Assembly (NCBI RefSeq): GCF_032191835.1
Contig: NC_083223.1
Span: 191,828,001-191,892,000, forward strand
Length of the DNA stretch: 64,000 nucleotides
Reading direction: 5' to 3'
Source of the DNA: Heteronotia binoei
Lineage: Eukaryota
The notes beneath the pieces were generated by a model that worked only from the letters and a program-made list of their open reading frames with translations, searched no databases and was not told the origin of the DNA. The translations under genes and the position numbers were made by a program. Below are positions 276-62,270 of this stretch, piece after piece; position 1 is the first letter of the stretch, and every line of letters begins with the position of its first letter.

Positions 276-1470
276 ATGTTGTTGTTATTATTAGTTTATT
301 TAAATTCCGCCCATTCCTCCGTGGGGGCTCAGGGCGGAACACAACATAATGAAATCACATTAAAATCATATATTAATAAAAGCAATTACAATTATTTCAT
401 AAACAAATAGCTCAGCAGAACAGTTTTGATGAGATGGTGCAGCTGGACAGTGCAGCGAGTCAGCGCAGTAAGATATACAGTATATACAGTAGGGGAGGCC
501 AACCGATCTAATGGGCAGAGGCCTGCCACCTCACCTGAAAACCTGGCGGAACAGTTCCGTTTTACAGGCCCTACGAAAGGCTAATAATCCAGGTAGGGCC
601 CGGATCTCTATAGAGAGCTGATTCCACCAGGTTGAGGCCAGGCCGAAAAGGACCTGGCCCTGGTAGAGGCAAGACAGGCATCTTTTGGGTCGGGGACAGT
701 CAGCCTATCCTGGGAGGCTGAACAAAGCAACGTCCGGGGCATATACGGGAAGAGACGGTCCCGCAAGTATGCTGGTCCCAGGCCATGTAAGGCTTTGAAA
801 GTCAGAACTAACACCTTGAAGCGAATTCGGTACTCTATAGGCAGCCAGTGCAGGCCACGAAGCACCGGCCACATGCTCTCCCGTATAGGTGATGCAGTTA
901 GCAGGTGAGCTGCCGCGTTCTGCACCCGCTGCAGTTTCCAGATCAGCTTCAAGGGCAACCCACATAGACCGAGTTACAGTAATCTAATCTGGAAGTGACC
1001 ATTGCATGGGTCACTGTGGCCAAGTCTTGGGAGGCGAGATATGGTGCTAGTTGCCTGATCTGCCGTAGATGGTGGAAGGCAGACCTGGCAGCTGCCACGA
1101 CCTGGGCCTCCATGGAAAGTGAGGCATCCAGAATCACTCCCAAGCTCTTCACCTGTTGGGTTGGCACTAAAACTGCGCCATCCAAGGGTGGGAGCTGGGT
1201 ACACAAACCCCCTCCCCTTCGACTCAGGCACAGGACCTCAGTCTTTGCTGGATTTAACTTCAGTTGGTTCTGCTGTAGCCATCCCACTATGGCTCCTAAT
1301 GCCTTGGACAGGTATTCAGGGGCAGAAGACGGTCTGCCATCCATCAGCAGATAGAGCTGGGTGTCATCAGCATACTGGTGACAGCCCAGTCTGAAACCTC
1401 GGGCAATCTGGGCAAGGGGGAGCATATAAATATTAAATAATATGGTGAGAGAATAGTTTCCTGCGGCACT
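276..1470 (-). mobile_element. L2-clade LINE, 5'-truncated RT 3' end
   Basis: ORFs with ILFNIYM..LAQ, CHQYADDTQLY, LKLNPAKTE, SRLDYCNS, LHWLPI; simple-repeat tail at about 276-330. Confidence 0.9.
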
Positions 1471-2059
1471 CCACATATAAGTGGGTGCCGCATGGAGTTT
1501 GCTCACCCAGCCTCACCCTTTGTCCTGGCCCCCGGAGAAAGGAGGAAAACCATTGCAAGGCTGTCCCCCAATAGATAATAATCGACTGTGTCAAACGCTG
1601 CTGATAGGTCGAGAAGAATCAGCAGCACCGACCCGCCTTAGTCCAGATGTCTTCTTAGGTCATCCGTGAGGGCGACTAGCCCCAAAAGAAGGTGCCCCTA
1701 TCCTTCATTATTTCCTGTGGAAGGAAATAATTGAAAAGGTGTGCTGTCCTTTTAAATGTGATGGCCAGAACTCCCTTTGGAGTTCAATTATGCTTGTCAC
1801 AGCCTTGATCCTGGCTCCACCCATAATGTCTCCTGGCTCCACCCCCAAAGTCTCCTGGTTCCACCCCCAAAGTCCCCAGATATTTCTTGAATTGGACTTG
1901 GCAACCCTACCCTGAGGCCCTCCTCTCACTGTCCTATAGCAGCAAGGAGAGGACACCCCTCAGCATCAGCTGGCATTGCCTGGGGTAGGATGATCTGGCT
2001 CTGGTACAGCTACAGGTGCCAACCCCAGGTTTGGAAATTCCTGAAGATTTTGACTAGTA

Positions 2060-8814: not shown

Positions 8815-9495
8815 TAATAATAATAATAATAAACTTTTATTTGTACCCCGCCCTCCCCGCCTAGGCAGGCTCAGGGCGGCTAACAAGACATGGTAAAACC
8901 ATGATACAGATAAACAATAGATAATATAATTAATAATTTAAACAATAAAACCAATAAAACAATATGACATTAAAATACAGTCGAATGGCGTATAAGATGG
9001 CTCGGTATTACTGATCTTATCAGGAGTTCTGTCTTAAAAAGCTAGCTGGAAGAGGGCAGTTTTGCGTGGATCACTGTTGCCAGGTCGCTGCGCTCCAGGA
9101 AGGGGGCCAGCTGCCTCGCCCGTTTAAGATGAAAAAAGGCGGACTTGGCAGTAGCTGCTATCTGGGCCTCCATTGTCAAGGGAGGCTCCAGTAGAACTCC
9201 CAAGCTACCAGTTGCGCCCCATCAAAAACTGGGAGAGAGACCCCATTCCCTAAACCGCCGCGACCCAGGCAAAGGACCTCTGTCTTCGCTGGATTCAATT
9301 TCAGCCCACTCAGCTTAATCCAGTCTGCCACGGCTTGCAGCACTCGGTCCAGATTTTCCGGGGCATTGCCAGTCCGGTCACCCATCAATAGATAGAGCTG
9401 GGTGTCATCAGCATACTGATGGCAACCCAGTCCATGTCTCTGGGCAATCTGGGCAAGGGGGCGCATAAAGATGTTGAATAGCATCGGAGAGAGAA
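8815..9495 (-). mobile_element. L2-clade LINE fragment, internally deleted
   Basis: LSPMLFNIFMRPLAQ...CHQYADDTQLY...LKLNPAKTEV; (taa)n tail at 8815-8831. Confidence 0.88.
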
Positions 9496-10185
9496 CTTTA
9501 AGGACCTTAAACAAGTGGAACAGTTGTCTCAATGACAATGACTATATCACTCCTAAATATATTTCTCAGGTGATAGAGGGATGAACAGACAGATTACATG
9601 ACACCATCAATTTAGTTCAAGTTCAAGTTAAGAGCATCCTCACATGCTAACGCCGCAACTAGCACTGTCAGAAACAGCCATAACCAATCACCCATGGACT
9701 TCTTTGCACAGAGCTTTCTTCCAAAGATTCAAATGTCATTTTTATACCTCTTACTGGATTGGCTTGTTCTTTGCTTTGTGCTATCAATACACAGTTTTCT
9801 CCTGGCCTCCCCAGGTCCTGCTGCTTGCCCTTTCATGTGAAAGGCCCCAGGACCAGAGGTAATGTTGCCCTGGTACTGAGCACAGCACTACTTTGTGATA
9901 GATAAATAGATTATAGGACTAATTTTATGCTTTGCTTTAAGATGAATTTTCATACCCTCAGCCATGGTTACTCGTCTCCTCTCTGGTCCTGGTGTTGTAT
10001 GTTTATGTGTTTCTACTGAATTATTTTATAATTTTAAATGTTATTTTAGTTGTGCAAAATTTTCTTGTTTGCATCCTTGGGGACCTTGATTGGGTTGGCT
10101 AGGCAGCATAAAATGTGTTAAATAAATAAAATACTAACAAGGAATAAGGTGTGTGCAAATAAATATCAACAGCTGAAAGACTTAC

Positions 10186-28450: not shown

Positions 28451-28508
28451 ATTTCCTTCGAAGATAAGTTAGCAAAGTAGTTTCTGGATCCACGTCTTTC
28501 TCCACTAC
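28451..28508 (-). CDS. XDH: XDH exon 2 (VVEKDVDPETTLLTYLRRK)
   Basis: ttgtctttcag|GTAGTGGAG...GGAAAT|gtatctgac; 58 nt. Confidence 0.96.
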
Positions 28509-31412: not shown

Positions 31413-31630
31413 ATGAACATATATGAACATATGAAGCTGCCTTATACTGAATCAGACCCTCAGTCCATCAAAGTCAGTATTGTCTACTCAGACTGGCAGC
31501 GGCTCTCCAGGGTCTCAAGCTGAGGTTTTTCACGCCTACTTGCCTGGACTCTTTAGTTGGAGATGCCGGGGATTGAACCTGGGAACTTCTGTTTCCCAAG
31601 CAGATGCTCTACCACTGAGCTACCATCCCC
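31413..31630 (-). mobile_element. tRNA-derived SINE with CR1-like tail
   Basis: Head GGGGATGGTAGCTCAGTGGTAGAGCATCTGC...GGTTCAATCCCC with A and B boxes; tail ...cagcttcatatgttcat. Confidence 0.75.
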
Positions 31631-41175: not shown

Positions 41176-42011
41176 AGCTATTGCAGAATATATCTAACAG
41201 GATAGTAGTTCATTTATGTGCCCAGAGGCCTTCTAGCCACTATGTAGCAAGCTTACTTGAAATGATCCTTTTAACTTATTGCATTTTAGCAACTCAAGGT
41301 GATTTGGGTAGTACAGAAGCCATCATAAACTGGTTTTCCTAAGTAGCTTCAATAGACTTAAAAGGATTAGATAACTGCTTAGGATGGCATTAGTTGACAT
41401 ACTGAACTAGTCCTCAACTTCTTGACTCAAAGTGTCAAAGCAGAAGTGAGATTTGAACACAGGATTAGTTCAGACTCTTAGATACTATGTTACATCAGTC
41501 ACTATGCTATTTTAACACCAGTTGCTGCTGGGAAACACTCTAGAGAATAACTGTAAAAGTAATGCCTGACAAACTTAAAATGGCAGGTGTACAGCCTTTA
41601 GTTCAAGATCACCAGTTCATCCGCTGCTCATGGCTACCTCACAAAGTGCAGATTGCCTGGTTTATACAACTGCGTTGTGCTAAAGCTAACCAACATCACC
41701 ATAATCGCTATTTTTCTTTGACAACAATGCATTTTTAGAAGAAAAAAATATGTATCTTTTCATGAAGGCTCACTGTTTAAGCTTCAGCTTTGAATGCACT
41801 AATTTATCCTTTGGTATTTCCCCCTCACACACTTCTAAAGAAACATTGAGAAGTTTTTTTCCCTATCTGTAAGCACTGCTGTTTGCTCATAAGCTCACAA
41901 AGAACACAAATCTAACTGCTGATTTTACATTGACTAGCCCTTAACGAACACTGGCTGATATGCCTGTGAAGTCGATTGGACCAATTAGAATCGAATATGA
42001 TTATATGCTGT

Positions 42012-42251
42012 ATTAGGGTTTGTAGAATCTTTCGGGATCAAGTGCCGTGTTCTACTGGAGAAAGTTTTCCATCCAGACGTTTCGTTCTCAGCTGCGGAGA
42101 ACATCCTCAGTGGCGTTGCAGCCGGAGCAGGCGCTCAGACCTTCTTGGCTGCTGTGCATTGAGTGGAGCTCCAGTAGAACACGGCACTTGATCCCGAAAG
42201 ATTCTACAAACCCTAATGATGTTACCAGCCGTGAAAACCTGAAATCTTTGA
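42012..42251. mobile_element. Short Penelope-like element insertion with inverted pseudo-LTR
   Basis: Perfect 49-bp inverted repeat (42012-42060, 42169-42217), hammerhead motif between the arms, flanking 14-bp direct repeat TATATGCTGTATTA (42002-42015, 42252-42265). Confidence 0.8.
42073..42113 (-). ncRNA. Minimal type I hammerhead ribozyme motif (Penelope-associated)
   Basis: Minus strand CCA-CUGAGGA-U-GUUCUC-cgcagcu-GAGAAC-GAAAC-GUC-UGG: intact core, 6-bp stem II, palindromic ACGU stem III, 3-bp stem I. Confidence 0.8.
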
Positions 42252-44553
42252 TATATGCTGTATTATTAGGAGGAAATAATGCTAGTGCTAATAAAAATCC
42301 CAATCTTATCAAGTCTCTCTGTATCAATCAGTTCCATGGCCTTGAAGTCATGCTCAAAAAACAATACTGGCCATTTGTAATGTCATGCTGTCAGAAACAG
42401 AAACCAAGTAACCTTTCCCTTCAGCGTCAGTGCAGGGTATCATGTTCCATTCCAGTCTCTGGGTCAACATTCCCAGGGAGGTGTGTTGCAAAACTCCTCC
42501 TGTTCTTCAAGCCTCTTGCTGTGGTAGCATTACATAATAACAGTTTACTTTTTCTGCAGTGTTTAAATGAGCTGAACAAACTTTAGCAACACACCCTTTG
42601 AGACTTCCTGGTTTCCACGGAATGAGCACGGCTCTCTCTTGTCATATGGACCCACTTTATTAGGCAGTGGTACAACACAAACTATCCCCTAATATCCCTA
42701 AAGGTGGCCAAAATAGATAAACTGTGTACCCAGACAAGCGTGGAAGCACTTCAGGCCATATCCTAGTGACAAAAAAACCTCTTTACATGGGAAGGAGCCC
42801 TGATTCCATGCCCAAGAAAATCTCTGTGGCTCTCCAAATCTTTGCAGCCCCCAGATTCATTTTACTAAAAATGCTGGAGATCCTTGATGGTTTGTGGATA
42901 TACAACAAATATTGCTAAATCAGGTATATACAATAAGGTTTCCAAGTAATTGGAAAAACTGATACTTAGGTCCAAACTCAACCTTTCTCATTCTTTTGAG
43001 AGGACAAACGCTGTTCAAAAGCAGCATCCATGGCAAAGCCTCCAGTCATTTCACCCTTACATCAGCAAAATGCTGGGAAAGGCACTTGGGTTGCCTAATA
43101 ACAGCTTTACAGCCTCTAAAGGTTGAAATTCAGGCGCCTGTCAAGAGGAAATAAGAGTGAACCTGCTCTGTGATTTGCTGAGGAAACCCAGCCCCATCTC
43201 CACCCCTGACCCCTTCCAGCTGTACAAGGCACAAGAAATCTCTTCACAGCTCTCGGTGTTATTCTTTGTAATACCCCTATGTGATAGCACTGGGGTCCAT
43301 CTCTTTTCCGGGAAGTATCACCCACAGCTCCAGGCAAGGAAGCAGAATTCTACCATGCCATACCAGATTAGTCTAAATTATTCACAGTGAAGCAGAGGGG
43401 AGTTGCTAATTTGCTTTGCTTTGCGTAGGTCAGTCCTGTGACTAGAGCAAAATCTTCAGAGTCAGGCAATCTTGATTTCTTTAATCTAAGCAGAGCTGTA
43501 CTAGTTCAAACAGAAACATCTGGATAAAATGCCCTGCCTCTGAATTGAGAATGGAATCATCCACCTGCTTTTCCACCTCTGGCATGCAGCTGTCTCTAGC
43601 ATTTGATCTCTTTGAGATGGAGGAATTTTCTGTGAGTTTGCGGACTCTTGAGGGAGGAGATTGTGTGTGTGGGGGGGGGGGTGTTAATTAAAGTTAGCAT
43701 GTGCAGCACATTTGTCCTGTGCAGTCCAGCGAAAAATGATACAATTGTTTAATTCAAGGTCAGTTTGTTGCTCACAGTACAAAGTACAATGTGAGGCGTG
43801 TGCTAGATACGTATGTAACTGACATTATAAATATTCATATATTTTATAGTAGTACAGAAAATACTCCCAGAGGATGTCTTCACATGAACATGTGAATTTC
43901 AGTGGGCATCCCTCAGTAACTCAGCTCTGCTCTGTTCTGTCAAATTTAGGGATTAAGTTTTTCAATGAAATGAGTGCCCATATTTTAACATTTGAACTGT
44001 GTCACAACTGTATCAAGAAACAGCCTGAAAAGCACTATCAATCTGTTTTGCTTTTAAAGTTTGATTGTGTTCTTCTGAAAACAAAAGCCATGGCTCACGT
44101 GGTACTTTTATTATTGGTTCTCTCTCCCTCTGTTTGAATAAGTGCATTAATGTGATGAGGTGGTCAGTGCATCAAACTAGGATCTGGGAGACCCAGCTGC
44201 AAACTCTCACTCTTCCAGGGAAGCTTGCTGGGTGACCTTGGGCCAGTTACAACCTCTCAGCCTAATCAACTCACAGGGTGACTGTGATGATAAAGTAAAG
44301 AGGGGAGAAAGATATTGCAAACTGAGAAAACCAGTGTAGAGACATCTAAATAAGTGGCAACAATGTGACAAATGACTGCGGTGCTGATTTCTTCTAGTAC
44401 ATATGGTAAAAGACTGTAGCTGTTGTGAGGGTGGCAGATTTGGGAGCTGCAGGCTGAAGTGATTGTAAAGTAACGGAGCTTCTGAGAATTGTAATCCATG
44501 GACTGAGATATACACACACACAAAGTTTTTTAAAAAAGTGGAAACTCCCCTAC

Positions 44554-44601
44554 CTTCTTGCCATTTATGAAGAAGACAAGTTCATCCTTTTCTGAAGCCA
44601 T
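44554..44601 (-). CDS. XDH: XDH coding exon 1 (MASEKDELVFFINGKK)
   Basis: Minus strand cagaATGGCTTCAGAAAAGGATGAACTTGTCTTCTTCATAAATGGCAAGAAG|gtaggg; matches the DELVFFVNGKK N-terminus; phase 0 joins exon 2. Confidence 0.93.
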
Positions 44602-52368: not shown

Positions 52369-52540
52369 NNNNNNNNNNNNNNNNNNNNNNNNNNNNNNNN
52401 NNNNNNNNNNNNNNNNNNNNNNNNNNNNNNNNNNNNNNNNNNNNNNNNNNNNNNNNNNNNNNNNNNNNNNNNNNNNNNNNNNNNNNNNNNNNNNNNNNNN
52501 NNNNNNNNNNNNNNNNNNNNNNNNNNNNNNNNNNNNNNNN
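52369..52540. other. Assembly gap (172 N)
   Basis: Direct reading. Confidence 0.99.
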
Positions 52541-53436
52541 ATAATATCTGTTCTGCTTTTTCCACAGTGCCTACTCAAGGGGCATTTCAGTGTCTGACTT
52601 CATCCACTGTGAATTACACAATTTTGGACACCTCACAAAAGTGAAAACATTCAAGTCATAGTGTCTTTAGAATAATTACCTTGTTATTTCAATGATACCA
52701 CTACCAAGAATAGCTATAATGATCATGGAAGTAAATGCATTTATTCAGGACAAAAATGGAAAAATAGAATGTGAAGAGCCATACTTCTGTCAACCAACAA
52801 TGCTTCCTTTCTCAGGCATAAATTAATGTTTTTTTCTTTAGATGAGAGGTCATGTTTTTAACAAGGTTGAAAATTTTACCTGCTACCTCCTCCCATTCTT
52901 TTGTGATGCAACTGTACTTTGAAACCATCAGTCAGGGTGGAAGAGATCTTTTACCAAGCTGGTAGCTACAGGAGGCATATGAGGATAATACCCTTTCGGA
53001 AATATTCCATGCTGTCTCTGAATTCCCAGCTTTTTGTGTTTGTTTATATAAGCTTATAGTAAATTTTAGTACAGAGAAAATGCAAGGAGTTTTTTGCCTT
53101 GATAGCTCCAGGAAGAATGGGAGAAAATAAACTGCCAGAGATTCTGGACCTGAGTCACTTAACTCCTTCTGAATAACATTCATTCTGCTCCATCTCATAA
53201 CCTTTTCTGCCTGGGCCCTTTACCTCTATCTGATTTCTCTTCTCTTTAATTTATAAAATTATTTTTATAAATTTATAAATAATTGTATAAATTTTATAAA
53301 TAATTTATAATATTATTATTATTAAAATGTATGTACTAACTGTATTTTAAAATTGTTTTATGTAAATCATGGTATACCATGTCTTGTTAGCCACCCTGAG
53401 CCTGCTTCGGTGGGGAGGGCGGGATACAAATAAAAG

Positions 53437-53437
<1 letters not shown>

Positions 53438-53520
<83 letters not shown>
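53438..53520. repeat. (ATT)n microsatellite at the tail of an L2-like 3' end
   Basis: gccaccctgagcctgcttcggtggggagggcgggatacaaat followed by (att)n. Confidence 0.85.
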
Positions 53521-53522
<2 letters not shown>

Positions 53523-55141
53523 AATTGTAAGTCAGAACACTGGACAGAAAACTGGAGTGAGATGTATACTGTTTGCAGTGAGAAATTCACTTCAGGACTA
53601 GGTGGGTCCATCAGAAGAGAGGGCAGGAGCAGAAAAAAAATGAATGCCTGTTTTTACTCAGTCTGGTATTGGGTTTTAATCATTAATTGCAAACCACCTT
53701 GCTATAACTTGCCTGTGTAAATGAATGACTGCCTCTGAGCATGTGCCAGATGCCTTTGATTCACCAGAGAATAACCTCTGTCAAACTCCTAATCTCCCCT
53801 CCCCAAAAATCTTGGATTAAGGCTAAACAGTTTATGAGACATAATGCTCAGGTATGTTTAAACTCTAGAATCTCTCCTTACAGAAGAAGAAGGACTGTGA
53901 AGGTCTGTGCAGCATAATATTCAGGCAGTCTTCAGCCCAATCAGTTATCACTACAAAAATAAGGTCTTTGGGAGTATGATACTCTGAGTATCTTAATATA
54001 TCTGTTCCGAGAATAATCAGGATTTTTGAGCAGGAACACACAGGAACACAGTTCTGGCTGGCTTGGTGGCAGGGGGTGTGGCCTAATATGCAGTGGGTTG
54101 AACTGCTCATATGCAGAGTGCTTTTTTCTCACAACACAATCAACCACACAGAACTACCTGCCTGGTGCTAGGTATGCCCTATCTGACATAATTTCTAGAC
54201 TGGAAGAAGTGATTTGTAGGCAGGTGTAATTTAAGAATCTCTCATTTTAGTAAGTAAAACTCAGATAAATTGCCATCTCTCCACTACTCAGCCTTCTAAA
54301 CACTGTTTTAAATCCTATTCCTTCCAAATGAAAGGCTTCTTTTAGTTTCATGAACTAATTACTGAAATATTGTCACACCTTGGTGATTGGAAAGACTGCT
54401 TTTGAACTGTCTTCTGTTAATGTTTTTTCGCTACATGCTCTTTTCTATTTGAAGTTCTATGTGCAAGCTTTGTCAGAACACCACTGACCTTTACATTACA
54501 CTGTCTTGTTGTTTAAAATTTGTGATGTCTCTTAGCGGGTTTTTTGTTTACACAATACTGCAGATACATGGCATTTGTGATAAAAACAACACATTCATGA
54601 CAGCTTCATCTGTCCAAGAAGGGCCTTCTGAGATGCCATCCTACAAATGAACAAGATCAACAGTTGCCCATACACTTGCGTTTTATGTTGTGGTCCTCAC
54701 ATTGTGGAATGGCCTGCACAAGAAGGCTTCCACATGTCTATCTTTCTACAAACTATATAAAACAGAATTGCTCAGAGGGCTTTTTTGGAAGAGTAATAGG
54801 GGGATATTACAATGGAATGATTCAAGACAGTGTTTTCTCACAAAAAACAAGACTGAACAAGGCCACTATGTATAGTATGTATTTTCTGTTTGCTGTATGT
54901 ATTATCCTGCTCCCACCACATTGTCTTCTACCTATGTAATATTTTCTGCACTATTTAACAAATCACATCAAATATTTTCTGCTTTGTTTCAAATCTCTGT
55001 AATCCTTGTCCAACTACATTGTTTATTAGGTGTCACTTCCTATTTACTGCATTGATTTACACCATGTAATCTGCCTTGAGTCTCAGTGAGAAAGGTGGAC
55101 TATAAGTAAATAAATGAGTACATGTAAATCGCAGGTGAGAG

Positions 55142-58689: not shown

Positions 58690-59690
58690 ATAAATAACAA
58701 GTAAGATCCAAGGCTGAGTTAAGCCCCACGGGCTCAAGAGAATTCATTTTGAAAATCCAGAAAGCCTCCTCATGGAGTAATACTTTCTGAATTTCATCTG
58801 CTGTCTTATAGGTACCCTGATACTTATACAGGACACAAAACTCATATCATTTTCAGAATGCTGATGGGAAAATGCTCCATAAGAGGAGCCTCCATATTGT
58901 GTGAACAAACCCTAGACTGGTGTTCCAGGACTCTAGCATGTATTTGTCTAGTCATGTTTCCTATGTACACCTTGCCACACCCACAGGTGATCGCATACAC
59001 CACATGACGCGTGGAACAGGTGCTGAAGTGTCTCAGTCTAACCTTAAGTCCACTGCCAGGACCATGAATTGTTTTAGAAAAAAAATCAATATATTTTGAC
59101 AACGGTTCCAGCACTGAGTTAGACCCGGAAACAATAGGTCTTCCCGGGGGAGGAGAAACACCTTTGTGTATTTTTGGTAGTGTATATAATACTGGGATCC
59201 TTGGGTTCTCAATCAGTAAAAACTTATGAGGAAAGGAAAGGTCCCCTGTGCAAGCATCAGTTGTTTCCGACTCTGGGGTGACGTTGCTTTCACAACGTTT
59301 TCACAGCAGACTTTTTATGGGGTGGTTTGCCATTGCTTTCCCCAGTCATCTACACTTTCCACCCACCAAGCTGGGTACTCATTTTACCAACCTCAGAAGG
59401 ATGGAAGGCTGAGTCAACCTTGAGCCAGCTACCTGAAAACCCAGCTTCCACTGGGGATTGAACTCAGATCGTGAGCAGGGCTTAGGACTGCAGTATTGCA
59501 GCTTTAACACTGTGCCAAGGGGCTCTTTAAAACTTATGAACCTTGCTGTTAATAAACCTCATCTGTTCTGCATCTGTAAGTACTATTTTTATAAGATCCA
59601 ACACATGTTTGGTAGGATCTCTCTGTAATTGGGTATAAATTGTCACATCTGCCAATTGCCTTCTAATTTCAGCACAAATCCCAAAGCTGT
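58690..59690 (-). mobile_element. Penelope-like retroelement (Neptune-like), RT core deleted, GIY-YIG endonuclease retained
   Basis: EIRRQLADVTIYTQLQRDPT...LYTLPKIHKGVSPPPGRPIVSG..SVLEPLSKYIDFF directly followed by TCSTRHVVYAITCGCGKVYIG..RVLEH and LLHEEAFWIFKMNSLEPVGLN. Confidence 0.85.
59230..59528 (-). mobile_element. tRNA/RTE-tail SINE inserted into the Penelope-like element
   Basis: 11-bp TSD AAAACTTATGA (59219-59229, 59529-59539); the PLE peptide continues across it. Confidence 0.9.
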
Positions 59691-60959
59691 GAGTTTCACT
59701 GAGTAACCTTGCCCTGGACATGCTCTGGAATACACATCTAATTAATCATAATAGACCCAAAACATAACTAGTGTCTTTATTTGTATTGGAACTGTGGATA
59801 CTGTTGCCTGGCAGTCTTGCCTAACAAACTATGTGAATCAAGCCTGACACCATTTTACACAGTACTAAGAAGAGGTGAAAACCTATTATCCTTTATTAAC
59901 TTTTCCACTATGTAGAAATGTATGCAGCTGTATTGTCTTACTGCCCCCAATTATTGTTTTAATCATCTAATTCAAAATTAGTTCTCTATTCAGTATGAGT
60001 AATGGATTATGAATTGAACCCAAGACTGAATTCAAAAGGCCATCCCAAACATTCCAGATTAAGCATTTCTCCATGTAGATCAGGAGTGTCAAACATGTGG
60101 CTCAAGGGCTGGATCAGGTCTGTTAGTAACTCATTGTCAACTGCTTCCTTTTCTCTCTCTTACTTCCTTTTGTATCACAGCTTGCTTTGCCAGGCTTGCT
60201 CAGTCACACAGGAGATGCAGAGCAAAGCCATTATTTTCTCCATTGACTAACCAGCACATGAAGCAACTTATGTACAAAAGCTCACAGTGCTCACCCATTT
60301 CATGTTTCCCCCTGGGTCCTAGACTCAAAGCATTGACCATGAGATTTCTGTAATGAATGTCAATAAATCAAAACTAGGTTTGCAACTTACAAACACACAC
60401 CTGAACTACACCTGAATAGCATACTCAAGATTGCTACAGCACAGACGTTGTCTCCAGATTTTGATGCAATAATTCAGAACAACAGATGTCAGTTATCAGA
60501 GAATGTTAAATAAAATATTGCAAGAGGGTTAATCTTTTAACCAGATTTTATTTTAAGTTTTTTTTAAATCTTTAATTGTGTTTGTGTCCTTTACAAAATT
60601 TATATCTCCACTACCTGGCATTACATTTTATGGCTCACATGGCCCGGCCTTACAAGGTCTCATTTATGTCAGATCCAGCCCTTATGATAAATGAGTTCAA
60701 CATCCCTGATAATCAAGGTGGGAAGACTTGCTCAAAAAGAATAAGGCATATAAAACTGAGAGGCAGATAGTTATTACAGATATGAAAAGTTTGCATGCCC
60801 CAGCATGTCTTCAACAGTGTGGCTTGGCTTGCAGAGCTTGGTTGGGTTACTTTGCTCATTGCCAGGACAGCACAAGAACATTCACCAAAGCATCTGGGAT
60901 TTTCTAAAGCTTAATCAAGTTCCTTTATATGCCAAAGGCTCTAAGGCAGATATATGATT

Positions 60960-61720
60960 TTCTTACTGGTTACTAAAATGCACACTTCACCTCTGCCAGC
61001 ATGTTGGCACCAACATCCATGACCATGTAGCCACAGATGATGTTGCCACTGTCCACCCACTCCCTCAGGCTTCTCTGTATCAAACAGCAGTAATGTTTTG
61101 CACTGTGTGGTCTGCATCCATCCCCTGCACATGGAGCAAAACCACTTTGTAGCCCGCTGGCAGGACTGTTTCCTCCTGGGGCCTTGGCCATGCCCTGACA
61201 GTCCTGCTGGCTGCTCCAGAGATCTGTCATGAAGTACATTTCTGCCTTGTGCTCTGGAGACCCAAGCCTTGACCATCACCACTGTAGTAGGTGAAAGACT
61301 TTGGCCTCCATGGGGGATAAGGGTTGGCCATCCACAGTGATCACTAAAGATGAGACAAGTGAATGCTTTCTGTACCTTCCACATAGCCCTTCTGGAGTGT
61401 GACCCACCTAGATGTCCCACCCACAGCAGGCCAAGTGTTGGGAGCAAAGCCTTTCTTGGAGGGGCCTCCTGCTCCCCTTCCACTTCACTTCTCCTTGCTG
61501 AGAGGGAGTGGGCCTCTTCTTCCTCCAGCTGTCTGCCACTCTTTCCTCCAGCAGCAACATAGTTGGATGCACCCTTTGCATGTGCCTGCAGAGGATGGAG
61601 GAAGAGAAGTATTGGGGCAGGTTTGCACCCTCCAGGCATGGATATGGCATAGTTGGCACTCTGCCACCCGGGGAGGATGTAAAACTGTTTCCAAACTATG
61701 ACCTTGGGATGGGAGAAGGA
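60960..61720 (-). pseudogene. Decayed hAT transposase with BED zinc finger
   Basis: Across frameshifts: VWKQF...AECQLC...SSSILCRHMQRVHP (BED W-x2-F, C-x2-C, H-x4-H) and YFMTDLWSS (hAT first catalytic Asp-like motif). Confidence 0.55.
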
Positions 61721-62270
61721 GGGAGCCACAGCTGCTTTTTGGCATTGCACTGAGAGACCACCAAGGGGTGTACTTGAGGCAGAAGCAGCAACAGGGAGTT
61801 GGGATGCTCCCTCCCCACCCCCACCCACCCCCAAAAAATCACTGTTGTCAGAGTTCTCCTCTCCAGAGAGTGTGAGCAACTGCTGGTGTTTCTGGGTAGT
61901 GCTGCTAACAACTCTTTTGCCTCTGTGGAGAGCCCTTGGGCCAGGAACAAATCAGGGGGAGGAAATTTCGAGACCCCTGATAATGCCCTGCTGGGTCTAG
62001 GCTTCAGTGGCCTGGCAGGATGGGTTTGGGGAGGGCTCTTTTTGTAGAAAAAGCACAGCAGGAACTCATTTACATATTAGCCCACACACCCCTGAAATAA
62101 CCATTGTTTCACACAAGGCTTTTTTGAAGAAAAAGCCCAGCAGGAACCTATGCATATTAGGCTGCACCCCCTACACCAAGCCAGCCAGAACAGCATTCCT
62201 GTGAGTTCCTGTTAAAAAAAAAAAAAGCCCTGGGTTTGGGGCTCAGGAGTGGGGGCCTATGCTATGCAGC

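What the first reader, a model, noticed from the sequence alone, without database searches (positions are those of the whole stretch)
42002..42265. Intact hammerhead ribozyme motif, sense to XDH pre-mRNA, inside a perfect 49-bp hairpin in intron 1
Seen: a ~240-bp insertion with a 14-bp flanking duplication and a 49/49 inverted repeat, so it is young. Between the arms, the minus (XDH-sense) strand reads CCA-CUGAGGA-U-GUUCUC-loop-GAGAAC-GAAAC-GUC|UGG, with predicted cleavage between 42076 and 42075. Established: Penelope-like elements carry minimal type I hammerheads whose palindromic stem III usually needs dimerisation. Inference: every XDH transcript would carry a ribozyme held in the loop of a long dsRNA stem. 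That could cleave nascent RNA (possibly in trans with other copies of the family), attract ADAR or Dicer, or slow intron 1 removal. The insertion may also be polymorphic.
Basis: partly seen in the sequence, partly recalled or inferred. Interest (0 to 1): 0.8.

Follow-up and report, generated by a model that had tools for sequence, protein, structure and literature searches.

The report
Truncated Penelope-like retroelement with hammerhead
The 236-bp hairpin in XDH intron 1 is an ordinary dead remnant of a lizard Penelope-like (Poseidon-type) retrotransposon; its hammerhead motif is genuine by homology, but nothing suggests it cuts XDH RNA.

Summary
A 236-bp insert (42016-42251) has a perfect 14-bp target-site duplication and 49/49 inverted arms. 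Its minus strand, which is XDH-sense in intron 1, carries a complete minimal type I hammerhead with the cut predicted between 42076 and 42075.

The structure is a known kind. It is two 5'-truncated 3'-terminal fragments of one Penelope-like element (PLE), joined head-to-head. Copy 1 (minus strand, 42165->42016) holds the hammerhead and a 49-nt segment S. Copy 2 (plus strand, 42169-42251) holds S and a 34-nt tail. The hairpin is the S overlap.

This matches published PLE anatomy, and the Anolis Poseidon (PAc) biochemistry explains it:
- both target strands are cut at ATT motifs and extended;
- there are two internal reverse-transcription start sites, with the tail between them;
[quoted passage not shown] The layout here is identical.

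Against Poseidon_Ac, the helices show 4 compensatory pair changes.

Laid reads come only from other copies of the family. The flanks have zero depth and no RNA ends pile up at the cut site. No cis dimer partner exists.

The scan has 59 earlier notes holding 'hammerhead' and 'Penelope', and those shown are from this genome. An effect on XDH is unsupported. The kind is already known, so interest is low.

The parts
42002..42015 (.). Left copy of the 14-bp target-site duplication TATATGCTGTATTA. ATTA motifs lie at 42000-42003 and 42012-42015, at the left and right ends of the duplicated target, where the two nicks are inferred.
   Evidence: PAc endonuclease prefers 5'-ATT-3' on both strands (PMC11167929).
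42252..42265 (.). Right copy of the 14-bp target-site duplication.
   Evidence: Loose ends of family reads and contigs fall at 42251-42254.
42016..42251 (.). The whole 236-bp insertion: two head-to-head 5'-truncated fragments of a PLE.
42016..42165 (-). Copy 1: a PLE fragment in sense on the minus strand, running from about 61 nt upstream of the ORF ATG to about +89/93. It holds the hammerhead, 15 nt and segment S, and has no tail. Its 3' end overlaps the duplication by the 4 bases ATTA (42012-42015).
   Evidence: Loose ends at 42165 show that family copies continue 5' with other sequence. Homology to Poseidon_Ac is shown.
42073..42113 (-). Minimal type I hammerhead motif. Helix I is CCA/UGG (3 bp). 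The core is CUGAGGA with an unpaired U. Helix II is GUUCUC/GAGAAC (6 bp) with a 7-nt loop. Then come GAAA, C15.2-G16.2, U16.1 and C17. The predicted cut is between 42076 and 42075.
   Evidence: 9/9 pairs are kept in Poseidon_Ac, with 4 compensatory changes.
42102..42104 (-). ATG (A9, the unpaired U, G10.1): the start codon of the PLE ORF remnant (MFSAAENETSGWKTFSSRTRHLIPKDSTNPN). The cut site is 26 nt downstream, as in PAc.
   Evidence: PMC11167929; consensus.
42012..42060 (-). Left arm: segment S of copy 1 (49 nt).
   Evidence: Reads mapping here carry the reverse complement of the tail as a loose end at 42012.
42166..42168 (.). A 3-bp junction (GAG) between the two truncated copies. It is filler or microhomology.
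   Evidence: Loose ends at 42165 (behind) and 42169 (before).
42169..42251 (+). Copy 2: a PLE fragment in sense on the plus strand, made of S (42169-42217, the right arm) and the tail. It is truncated before the hammerhead. In frame it reads SSRTRHLIPKDSTNPNDVTSRENLKSL.
42218..42251 (+). The 34-bp tail, present at one end only. It is the stretch between the two internal reverse-transcription start sites of PLEs.
   Evidence: PMC8557442; PMC11167929; alignment.
44554..44601 (-). Coding part of XDH exon 1 (MASEKDELVFFINGKK), followed by a GT donor at 44553-44552.
28452..28508 (-). XDH exon 2 (VVEKDVDPETTLLTYLRRK; the borders are approximate).

Best explanation
The feature is a dead-on-arrival insertion of a Penelope-like retrotransposon of the Penelope/Poseidon type. 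It is related to, but distinct from, Poseidon_Ac of Anolis carolinensis.

Inferred mechanism: the element's endonuclease nicked both strands of an AT-rich target at two ATTA motifs 12 nt apart, which gave the 14-bp duplication. Both 3'-OH ends then primed reverse transcription on the element's RNA.
- One cDNA started at the distal internal start site. This is copy 2, which has the 34-nt tail.
- The other started at the proximal site. This is copy 1, which has no tail and shows a 4-nt ATTA overlap with the target.
- Both cDNAs stopped early, after 83 and about 150 nt, and were joined head-to-head.

The 49 nt present in both copies make the perfect inverted repeat. Only the longer copy reaches the hammerhead, which in these elements overlaps the ORF start at the pLTR-ORF junction.

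The hammerhead motif is therefore a real, intact copy of the element's protein-assisted minimal ribozyme. In the XDH pre-mRNA it is a passive passenger. As a lone monomer without helix III, and without the rest of the RNA that PAc insertion needs in vitro (the first 172 nt of the ORF, inferred there to hold the protein-binding motif), it most likely does not cleave.

Shown: the anatomy, the homology, the multi-copy family, and the absence of RNA ends at the site in family transcripts. Inferred: the order of events at insertion and the lack of effect on XDH.
For: Anatomy.

Family structure from loose ends of reads and contigs:
- Canonical copies read ...hammerhead-15 nt-S-tail-3' and continue 5' beyond 42165.
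- The element's ends fall at 42012 and 42251-42254.
- The flanks have depth 0 and the element has depth 50-320, so it is a multi-copy family.
- Word share was 0.50-0.68 for the element alone against at most 0.17 for the 901-bp locus.
- Both arms share a variant that differs from the family majority at mirror positions 42037 and 42192. This points to one template.

Literature:
- PLE insertions are 5'-truncated, often have an adjacent inverted 5'-truncated copy, and carry a 30-40-bp tail at one end only (PMC8557442).
- PAc cuts and extends both strands at ATT motifs. Reverse transcription starts at two internal sites with the tail between them.
- In PAc the ORF starts at stem II and the cut is 26 bp after the ATG. 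The hammerhead is inactive without protein, and no RNA-seq ends are seen at the cut (PMC11167929).

Here the ATG is at 42104-42102 and the cut is exactly 26 nt later.

Homology to the Poseidon_Ac consensus:
- Hammerhead: 9/9 pairs in both sequences, 4 compensatory changes, and 33-44% pairing in the slid controls.
- S plus tail aligns with ORF nucleotides about 45-125.

The min-HHR features of Cervera & de la Pena 2014 are all present. On cleavage: no end pile-up and smooth depth over 42075/76, a weak dimer helix and a rarely formed helix I, and no second motif on the same strand.
Against: - The autonomous parent of this particular family was not seen. The insert matches Poseidon_Ac at only 35 of 52 aligned columns around the hammerhead, mostly in the core, so the family name is not established.
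- No read or contig covered the flanks. This locus's transcription, cleavage, editing and polymorphism were not observed at all.
- RNA-seq of this kind is a poor detector of 5'-OH ends, so weak cleavage cannot be excluded.
If it has the same junction, that would suggest the palindrome itself is copied.
Confidence: 0.87

Rival explanations
1. The hammerhead is catalytically active in XDH pre-mRNA. It would act alone, by pairing in trans with transcripts of other family copies, or with help from PLE protein, and it would cut nascent intron 1 RNA and lower or modulate XDH output.
For: All core nucleotides are intact and the helices are supported by covariation. The motif is on the XDH-sense strand. 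Family RNA is abundant in RNA runs, so trans partners exist. The PAc hammerhead does cleave when its protein is present (PMC11167929).
Against: There is no helix III, and the ACGU/ACGU dimer helix is only -1.7 kcal/mol. Helix I pair probability is about 0.03 inside the hairpin. No cis partner exists. Single min-HHRs show no cleavage, and dimers cleave only weakly at non-physiological Mg2+ (PMC4209133). PAc insertion needs the first 172 nt of the ORF in the RNA, and copy 1 stops at about +93. No ends pile up at the site in family RNA here or in the published Anolis data. A cut inside an intron 2.3 kb from the donor would often fall after or alongside splicing commitment.
Confidence: 0.03
2. The 49-bp perfect stem makes intron 1 RNA a substrate for ADAR or Dicer, and this has a regulatory effect on XDH through editing, nuclear retention or slower splicing.
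For: The predicted hairpin is very stable. Family RNA reads show 17 independent A>G-type transitions against 1 C>T. Most are outside CpG context, and the edited A has A or U as its 5' neighbour in 13 of 20 cases. That is the pattern expected from A-to-I editing of such foldbacks.
Against: No DNA run from the same individuals was available, so the A>G excess may be DNA variation among copies, possibly old editing fixed by retrotransposition. None of the reads comes from this locus, because the flanks have zero depth. The stem is deep in a 16-kb intron, far from splice sites. Edited intronic repeats are commonplace in animals and usually have no effect (general knowledge).
Confidence: 0.06
3. 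The 236-bp palindrome is itself a mobile non-autonomous unit (a mini-PLE or retrozyme-like element) copied as a whole, and not a one-off product of two-strand priming.
For: An earlier unchecked note reports another insert of the same length, 236 bp, with an inverted structure and a hammerhead elsewhere in this genome. Both ends of the unit carry the PLE 3' module.
Against: Loose ends show that most family reads leave the palindrome at 42165 and 42169 for canonical PLE sequence. Depth dips by about 45% at the junction, as expected if no reads bridge it. Other inverted joints occur at other positions. Other notes list palindromes of 185-433 bp with arms of different length, which fits independent events. 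There is no tandem repeat.
Confidence: 0.07
4. It is a MITE or foldback DNA transposon whose loop happens to resemble a hammerhead.
For: It has a terminal-looking inverted repeat and a flanking duplication.
Against: The right arm ends 34 bp from the duplication. A 14-bp duplication is longer than is usual for cut-and-paste DNA transposons (general knowledge). The descriptor gave 0 chance hits in 200 simulations. The insert is homologous to the Poseidon_Ac pLTR-ORF junction, including the ATG position and cut distance. Family copies continue beyond the inner junction.
Confidence: 0.01

Closest known systems
Poseidon_Ac / PAc, the Penelope-like element of Anolis carolinensis (Arkhipova 2006; Frangieh et al. 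2024, PMC11167929)
   Same: The pLTR-ORF junction layout is the same: 3-bp helix I, CUGAGGA, an unpaired U, an ATG at A9-U-G10.1, a 6-bp helix II with a 7-nt loop, GAAAC-GUC, and a cut 26 nt after the ATG. The downstream ORF sequence is homologous (GGAACAYGGC, CCCGAAAGA, ACAAACCCT, GCCNTGAAA). Other shared features are an AT-rich ATT target, a tail at one end, and two-strand priming that yields inverted copies.
   Different: The sequence family differs: helix II is fully rewritten with compensatory changes, and there are indels in S and the tail. This copy is only 236 bp and has no RT or endonuclease. The parent element was not identified.
Minimal hammerheads of metazoan PLEs (Cervera & de la Pena 2014, PMC4209133)
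   Same: No helix III or loop 3, palindromic 15.2-16.2, a nucleotide between A9 and 10.1, a G10.1-C11.1 pair, a long helix II, a short helix I, and frequent pairs on opposite strands 100-700 bp apart.
   Different: Nothing essential. Helix I here (3 bp) is at the short end of the reported range.
Non-LTR retrozymes of animals (Cervera & de la Pena 2020, PMC7229834; Li et al. 2026 preprint, 10.64898/2026.07.22.740005)
   Same: A short non-coding unit with a type I hammerhead, a target-site duplication, and derivation from the PLE pLTR region.
   Different: Retrozymes are head-to-tail tandem repeats that each carry a hammerhead and give circular RNAs. This is a single hammerhead in a head-to-head pair with no tandem repeat.
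Inverted intronic repeat pairs as ADAR substrates (for example inverted Alu pairs in primates; general knowledge)
   Same: A long, perfect intramolecular dsRNA stem in an intron. Family RNA shows an A>G excess.
   Different: The stem arises within one insertion event, not from two independent insertions. Editing at this locus was not observed.

Membership tests
PLE minimal hammerhead (min-HHR) | Conserved core C3-U4-G5-A6-N7-G8-A9 ... G12-A13-A14, A15.1-U16.1, and H17 at the cut | tested here: met
   CUGAGGA ... GAAA-C-G-U-C|U on the minus strand 42110->42075.
PLE minimal hammerhead (min-HHR) | No helix III or loop 3; positions 15.2-16.2 palindromic, so that two motifs can form helix III together | tested here: met
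   A-C-G-U with no loop. The duplex is only -1.7 kcal/mol.
PLE minimal hammerhead (min-HHR) | An unpaired nucleotide between A9 and 10.1, and a G10.1-C11.1 pair | tested here: met
   U at 42103; G at 42102 pairs with C at 42084.
PLE minimal hammerhead (min-HHR) | Long helix II (6-8 bp) and short helix I, kept by covariation within families | tested here: met
   6 bp and 3 bp. Against Poseidon_Ac, 9/9 pairs are kept and 4 have changes on both sides. Only two sequences were compared.
PLE minimal hammerhead (min-HHR) | Self-cleavage as a dimer or with PLE protein | not testable with these tools
   There is only indirect negative evidence: no read ends pile up at 42075/76 in family RNA.
Canonical type I hammerhead (Rfam hammerhead models) | Reaches the family's covariance-model score, including helix III | tested here: not met
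   No Rfam hit at E <= 10 on 41800-42500, and none at gathering score in the window.
Penelope-like element insertion (Penelope/Poseidon type), truncated copy | Sequence homology to a PLE pLTR-ORF junction | tested here: met
   Alignments to the Poseidon_Ac consensus. The ATG position and the 26-nt distance to the cut are the same.
Penelope-like element insertion (Penelope/Poseidon type), truncated copy | 5' truncation with an adjacent inverted 5'-truncated copy | tested here: met
   Copy 1 (42165->42016) and copy 2 (42169-42251) lie head-to-head, and family reads continue 5' beyond both truncation points. The feature is described in PMC8557442.
Penelope-like element insertion (Penelope/Poseidon type), truncated copy | A 30-40-bp tail at one end only | tested here: met
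   The 34-bp tail at 42218-42251 is absent after the left arm. Canonical copies have S followed by the tail.
Penelope-like element insertion (Penelope/Poseidon type), truncated copy | Target-site duplication at an AT-rich site with ATT motifs | tested here: met
   The 14-bp duplication has ATTA at both ends of the target, at 42000-42003 and 42012-42015. The preference is described in PMC11167929.
Autonomous (full-length) PLE | An ORF with reverse transcriptase and GIY-YIG endonuclease | tested here: not met
   Only the first 31 codons of the ORF are present. The insert is 236 bp.
Non-LTR retrozyme | Head-to-tail tandem repeats, each with a hammerhead | tested here: not met
   The only direct repeat is the 14-bp duplication. 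There is one hammerhead in the window.
MITE / foldback DNA transposon | Inverted repeats at both termini, directly next to the duplication | tested here: not met
   The right arm ends 34 bp before the duplication. Family copies run on past the inner ends of the arms.

The most novel reading that the evidence does not exclude
The strong A>G/T>C excess in RNA reads of this family (17 independent sites against 1 C>T) includes A14 and A15.1 of the hammerhead core (42081, 42080). It may reflect A-to-I editing of the foldback RNAs that two-strand priming creates at many PLE insertions. Editing would then disable the ribozyme core in part of the transcripts. If edited RNAs are reverse-transcribed, it would also feed the unusually high sequence variability that has been reported for PLE hammerheads.
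Probability: 0.2. Interest if true: 0.45.

Novelty: already known. Interest (0 to 1): 0.15.

Why it matters
The finding matters little for XDH. An intact ribozyme motif on the sense strand of a housekeeping gene's first intron looks striking, but it is one of a great many PLE remnants in this lizard genome. The evidence gives no sign that it acts on XDH RNA.

Its modest value is as a clean natural example of what the 2024 in vitro work on the Anolis Poseidon element predicts. One insertion shows both target strands primed, both internal reverse-transcription start sites used (tail at one end, none at the other), ATT-type nick sites, and a shared template variant in both arms.

It also gives a rule for the scan: the many 'hammerhead in a perfect palindrome' notes in this genome are the same phenomenon and can be triaged together.

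Tried and rejected
- **Rfam:** evalue mode on 41800-42500 and gathering mode on the whole window gave no hammerhead. I do not count this against the motif, because the models require helix III.
- **Read-laying for polymorphism, XDH intron expression, cleavage and editing at this locus:** the flanks had zero depth in all four runs, so none of these could be tested. No empty-site joint was seen, but no read could have shown one.
- **Bridging reads over the 42165/42169 junction:** the depth dip and the loose-end counts fit no bridging, but the tables do not allow a direct count.
- **Energy of the designed double hammerhead:** not computable in ViennaRNA because the structure is pseudoknotted. Only the 4-bp duplex energy is given.
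- **Self-similarity of the 108-nt inner part:** the 70% reverse-complement self-alignment over 218 nt is produced by the arms. The inner part is not a degraded second hammerhead.
- **Relaxed core search:** 30 other half-core matches in the window. None has helix II together with the GAAA-NN-UH context.
- **Pfam on the ORF at 58845-59300(-):** no hit.
- **Earlier scan notes by place and by sequence:** blank.
- **Literature search for A-to-I editing in Anolis with inverted repeats:** nothing relevant.
- **MITE and retrozyme readings:** rejected; see the membership tests.
Full report
**1.

The plus strand carries TATATGCTGTATTA at 42002-42015 and again at 42252-42265. It also carries a 49/49 inverted repeat, 42012-42060 against 42169-42217, with 108 nt between the arms. 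The insert proper is 42016-42251, which is 236 bp.

The minus strand from 42113 to 42073 reads CCA CUGAGGA U GUUCUC CGCAGCU GAGAAC GAAA C G U C | UGG. With standard hammerhead numbering, C3 is at 42110, A9 at 42104, G10.1 at 42102 and C11.1 at 42084. G12-A13-A14 are at 42083-42081, A15.1 at 42080, C15.2 at 42079, G16.2 at 42078, U16.1 at 42077 and C17 at 42076.

A descriptor I wrote for this architecture found only this site in the window on either strand. It found nothing in 200 first-order Markov simulations of the 64 kb. As RNA, the 264-nt stretch folds at -124 kcal/mol, z = -12.

XDH is on the minus strand. The exon 1 coding part is 44554-44601 (MASEKDELVFFINGKK, then GT). Exon 2 is near 28452-28508 (VVEKDVDPETTLLTYLRRK), and further XDH exons lie at lower coordinates. 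The insert is therefore in intron 1, sense to XDH, about 2.3 kb from the donor.

Rfam gives no hammerhead hit, even at E <= 10.

**2. The motif fits a published class exactly**

Cervera & de la Pena (2014, PMC4209133) defined minimal hammerheads in the pseudo-LTRs of Penelope-like elements (PLEs). These have:
- no helix III or loop 3;
- palindromic 15.2-16.2;
- a nucleotide between A9 and 10.1;
- a conserved G10.1-C11.1 pair;
- a long helix II and a short helix I.

They also note frequent pairs on opposite strands 100-700 bp apart. All of these features are present here. The missing helix III explains the blank Rfam result.

**3. What the insert is made of**

The flanks (41700-42009 and 42258-42600) have depth 0 in every run. 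The element has depth 50-320 in both mate orientations. Every read laid therefore comes from other copies of a multi-copy family. The run index says the same: word share was 0.50-0.68 for the element alone, against at most 0.17 for the 901-bp locus.

The loose ends give the family's canonical structure:
- **At 42012:** the letters before it end in GCTGGTAACATC. This is the reverse complement of 42218-42229, so in canonical copies the 49-nt segment S is followed by the 34-nt tail.
- **At 42169:** the letters before it (..GCGTCTGGAGGGAGGACTTT) are a variant of the minus-strand GAAACGTCTGGATGGAAAACTTT. Canonical copies therefore read hammerhead, 15 nt, S, tail.
- **At 42165:** the letters behind it are unrelated (AGGCCAGGGCTGC...), so canonical copies continue 5' of the inner region.
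- **At 42251-42254:** all reads diverge, which marks the element's end next to the duplication.

The insert is thus two 5'-truncated 3'-terminal fragments joined head-to-head. Copy 1 lies on the minus strand (42165->42016) and holds the hammerhead and S, with no tail. Copy 2 lies on the plus strand (42169-42251) and holds S and the tail. The 'perfect hairpin' is simply the S overlap.

Both arms carry the same departure from the family majority at mirror positions: 42037 is A where the majority has C, and 42192 is T where the majority has G. Mirror positions sum to 84229. This points to one template for both arms.

**4. This is textbook PLE anatomy, and the lizard element's biochemistry explains it**

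Craig et al. 2021 (PMC8557442) describe PLE insertions as highly 5'-truncated. They often have an inverted 5'-truncated copy adjacent, and a 30-40-bp tail often at only one end.

Frangieh et al. 2024 (PMC11167929) purified the Poseidon element of Anolis carolinensis (PAc) and reported the following:
- It cleaves and extends both target strands, preferring 5'-ATT-3'.
- Reverse transcription starts at two adjacent internal sites, and the tail is the sequence between them.
- The hammerhead shows no cleavage without PAc protein.
- No RNA-seq reads begin or end at the cut.

Here A9-U-G10.1 is an ATG (42104-42102), and 42101..42076 is exactly 26 nt. The frame reads MFSAAENETSGWKTFSSRTRHLIPKDSTNPN, and in copy 2 it continues DVTSRENLKSL. 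By eye this echoes Poseidon_Ac's M......ETSG...PKD. The duplicated target has ATTA at both ends, at 42000-42003 and 42012-42015.

**5. Direct comparison with the Poseidon_Ac consensus**

Across the tandem junction, the two hammerheads have the same geometry. All 9 helix pairs form in both sequences. Four pairs differ on both sides in a compensatory way and one differs on one side. When the partners are slid by 1-3 columns, only 33-44% of cells pair. With two sequences this is a small sample, but the pattern is clear.

S plus tail aligns with ORF nucleotides about 45-125 through blocks such as GGAACAYGGC, CCCGAAAGA, ACAAACCCT and GCCNTGAAA. Copy 1 ends opposite PAc nucleotides of about 85-89. 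Copy 2 ends near the published main start region at 111-118. This agrees with the two-start-site model. The family is related to Poseidon_Ac but is not the same, and I could not name it.

**6. Does it act on XDH RNA?**

Nothing supports this, and several points argue against it:
- As a monomer it lacks helix III. The only way to form that helix is a 4-bp ACGU/ACGU intermolecular duplex worth -1.7 kcal/mol.
- In the context of the 49-bp stem, helix II forms with probability about 0.8, but the helix I pairs form with probability about 0.03.
- No other hammerhead-like motif lies on the XDH-sense strand in the window.
- Single min-HHRs did not cleave in vitro, and dimers cleaved only weakly.
- The PAc motif needs its protein. 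PAc insertion needs the first 172 nt of the ORF in the RNA, whereas copy 1 stops near +93.
- In the raw RNA reads of the family, no place has an excess of molecule ends, and depth is smooth across 42075/76.

The caveats are that these are not XDH transcripts and that standard RNA-seq captures such ends poorly.

**7. Age and polymorphism**

The 49 + 14 = 63 paired bases without a difference put a 95% upper bound of about 4.8% on pairwise divergence (my calculation). The insert is therefore not necessarily very young. Polymorphism could not be tested, because no run covered the flanks.

**8. An unexplained side observation**

Among the variants listed at 10% or more in the RNA reads, 10 are A>G and 10 are T>C, against 1 C>T and 0 G>A. 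After merging mirror positions in the arms, this is 17 against 1. The uncorrected binomial p is about 2e-5 given the base composition.

Only 4 of the 20 would create a CpG. The edited A has A or U as its 5' neighbour in 13 of 20 cases, against 44% in the background. Twelve of the independent sites are on the element's sense strand and 5 on the antisense strand. Two of them are A14 and A15.1 of the hammerhead core.

This is what A-to-I editing of foldback RNAs would produce. Without DNA from the same animals it could equally be DNA variation among copies, possibly editing fixed by retrotransposition.

**9. Verdict**

The structure is an ordinary, already described product of PLE integration. 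The functional reading for XDH is unsupported.

The scan index holds 59 notes containing both 'hammerhead' and 'Penelope'. The eight shown to me are all from other pieces of this genome, and their palindromes range from about 185 to 433 bp. They are best treated as one phenomenon.

Noticed in passing
window 42012-42253 (family RNA reads laid on it): The variant spectrum in RNA reads of the family is 10 A>G and 10 T>C against 1 C>T and 0 G>A (17 against 1 after merging mirror arm positions). Most are outside CpG context, and they include hammerhead core positions A14 (42081) and A15.1 (42080). This could be A-to-I editing of PLE foldbacks or its footprint fixed in DNA. No matching DNA run was available.
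   Followed up: partly
window 31558-31630 (-): A tRNA-Pro(GGG)-like sequence inside XDH intron 1 (Rfam tRNA 47.1 bits; ARAGORN agrees). Several acceptor-stem pairs are non-standard. It is probably a tRNA-derived SINE head or a pseudogene.
   Followed up: partly
window 58845-59300 (-): A 152-aa open frame containing ...LPKIHKGVSPPPGRPIVSGS.... By eye this resembles the LPKIHK...RPIVS block of the Poseidon_Ac reverse transcriptase, so it may be a remnant of another PLE upstream of XDH. It has no Pfam hit at E <= 0.01.
   Followed up: partly
window 952-1512 (-) and 9179-9541 (-): Reverse-transcriptase fragments (Pfam RVT_1, E = 4.7e-08 and 2.1e-12), probably from LINE-type elements.
   Followed up: partly
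window 52369-52540: A run of 172 N (assembly gap or masked). Left as it is.
   Followed up: no
window 53350-53600: A long trinucleotide microsatellite. It reads as poly-Asn on the minus strand and poly-Ile on the plus strand, so it is (AAT)n-like.
   Followed up: no
window 60944-61951 (-): The longest open frame in the window (336 aa) has no Pfam hit. It lies upstream of XDH and its nature was not examined.
   Followed up: no
window 42081/42099 and 42157/42165: A few raw RNA reads (3-4 in run X17) join opposite strands at these positions. This suggests that other family copies have inverted junctions at other points.
   Followed up: no
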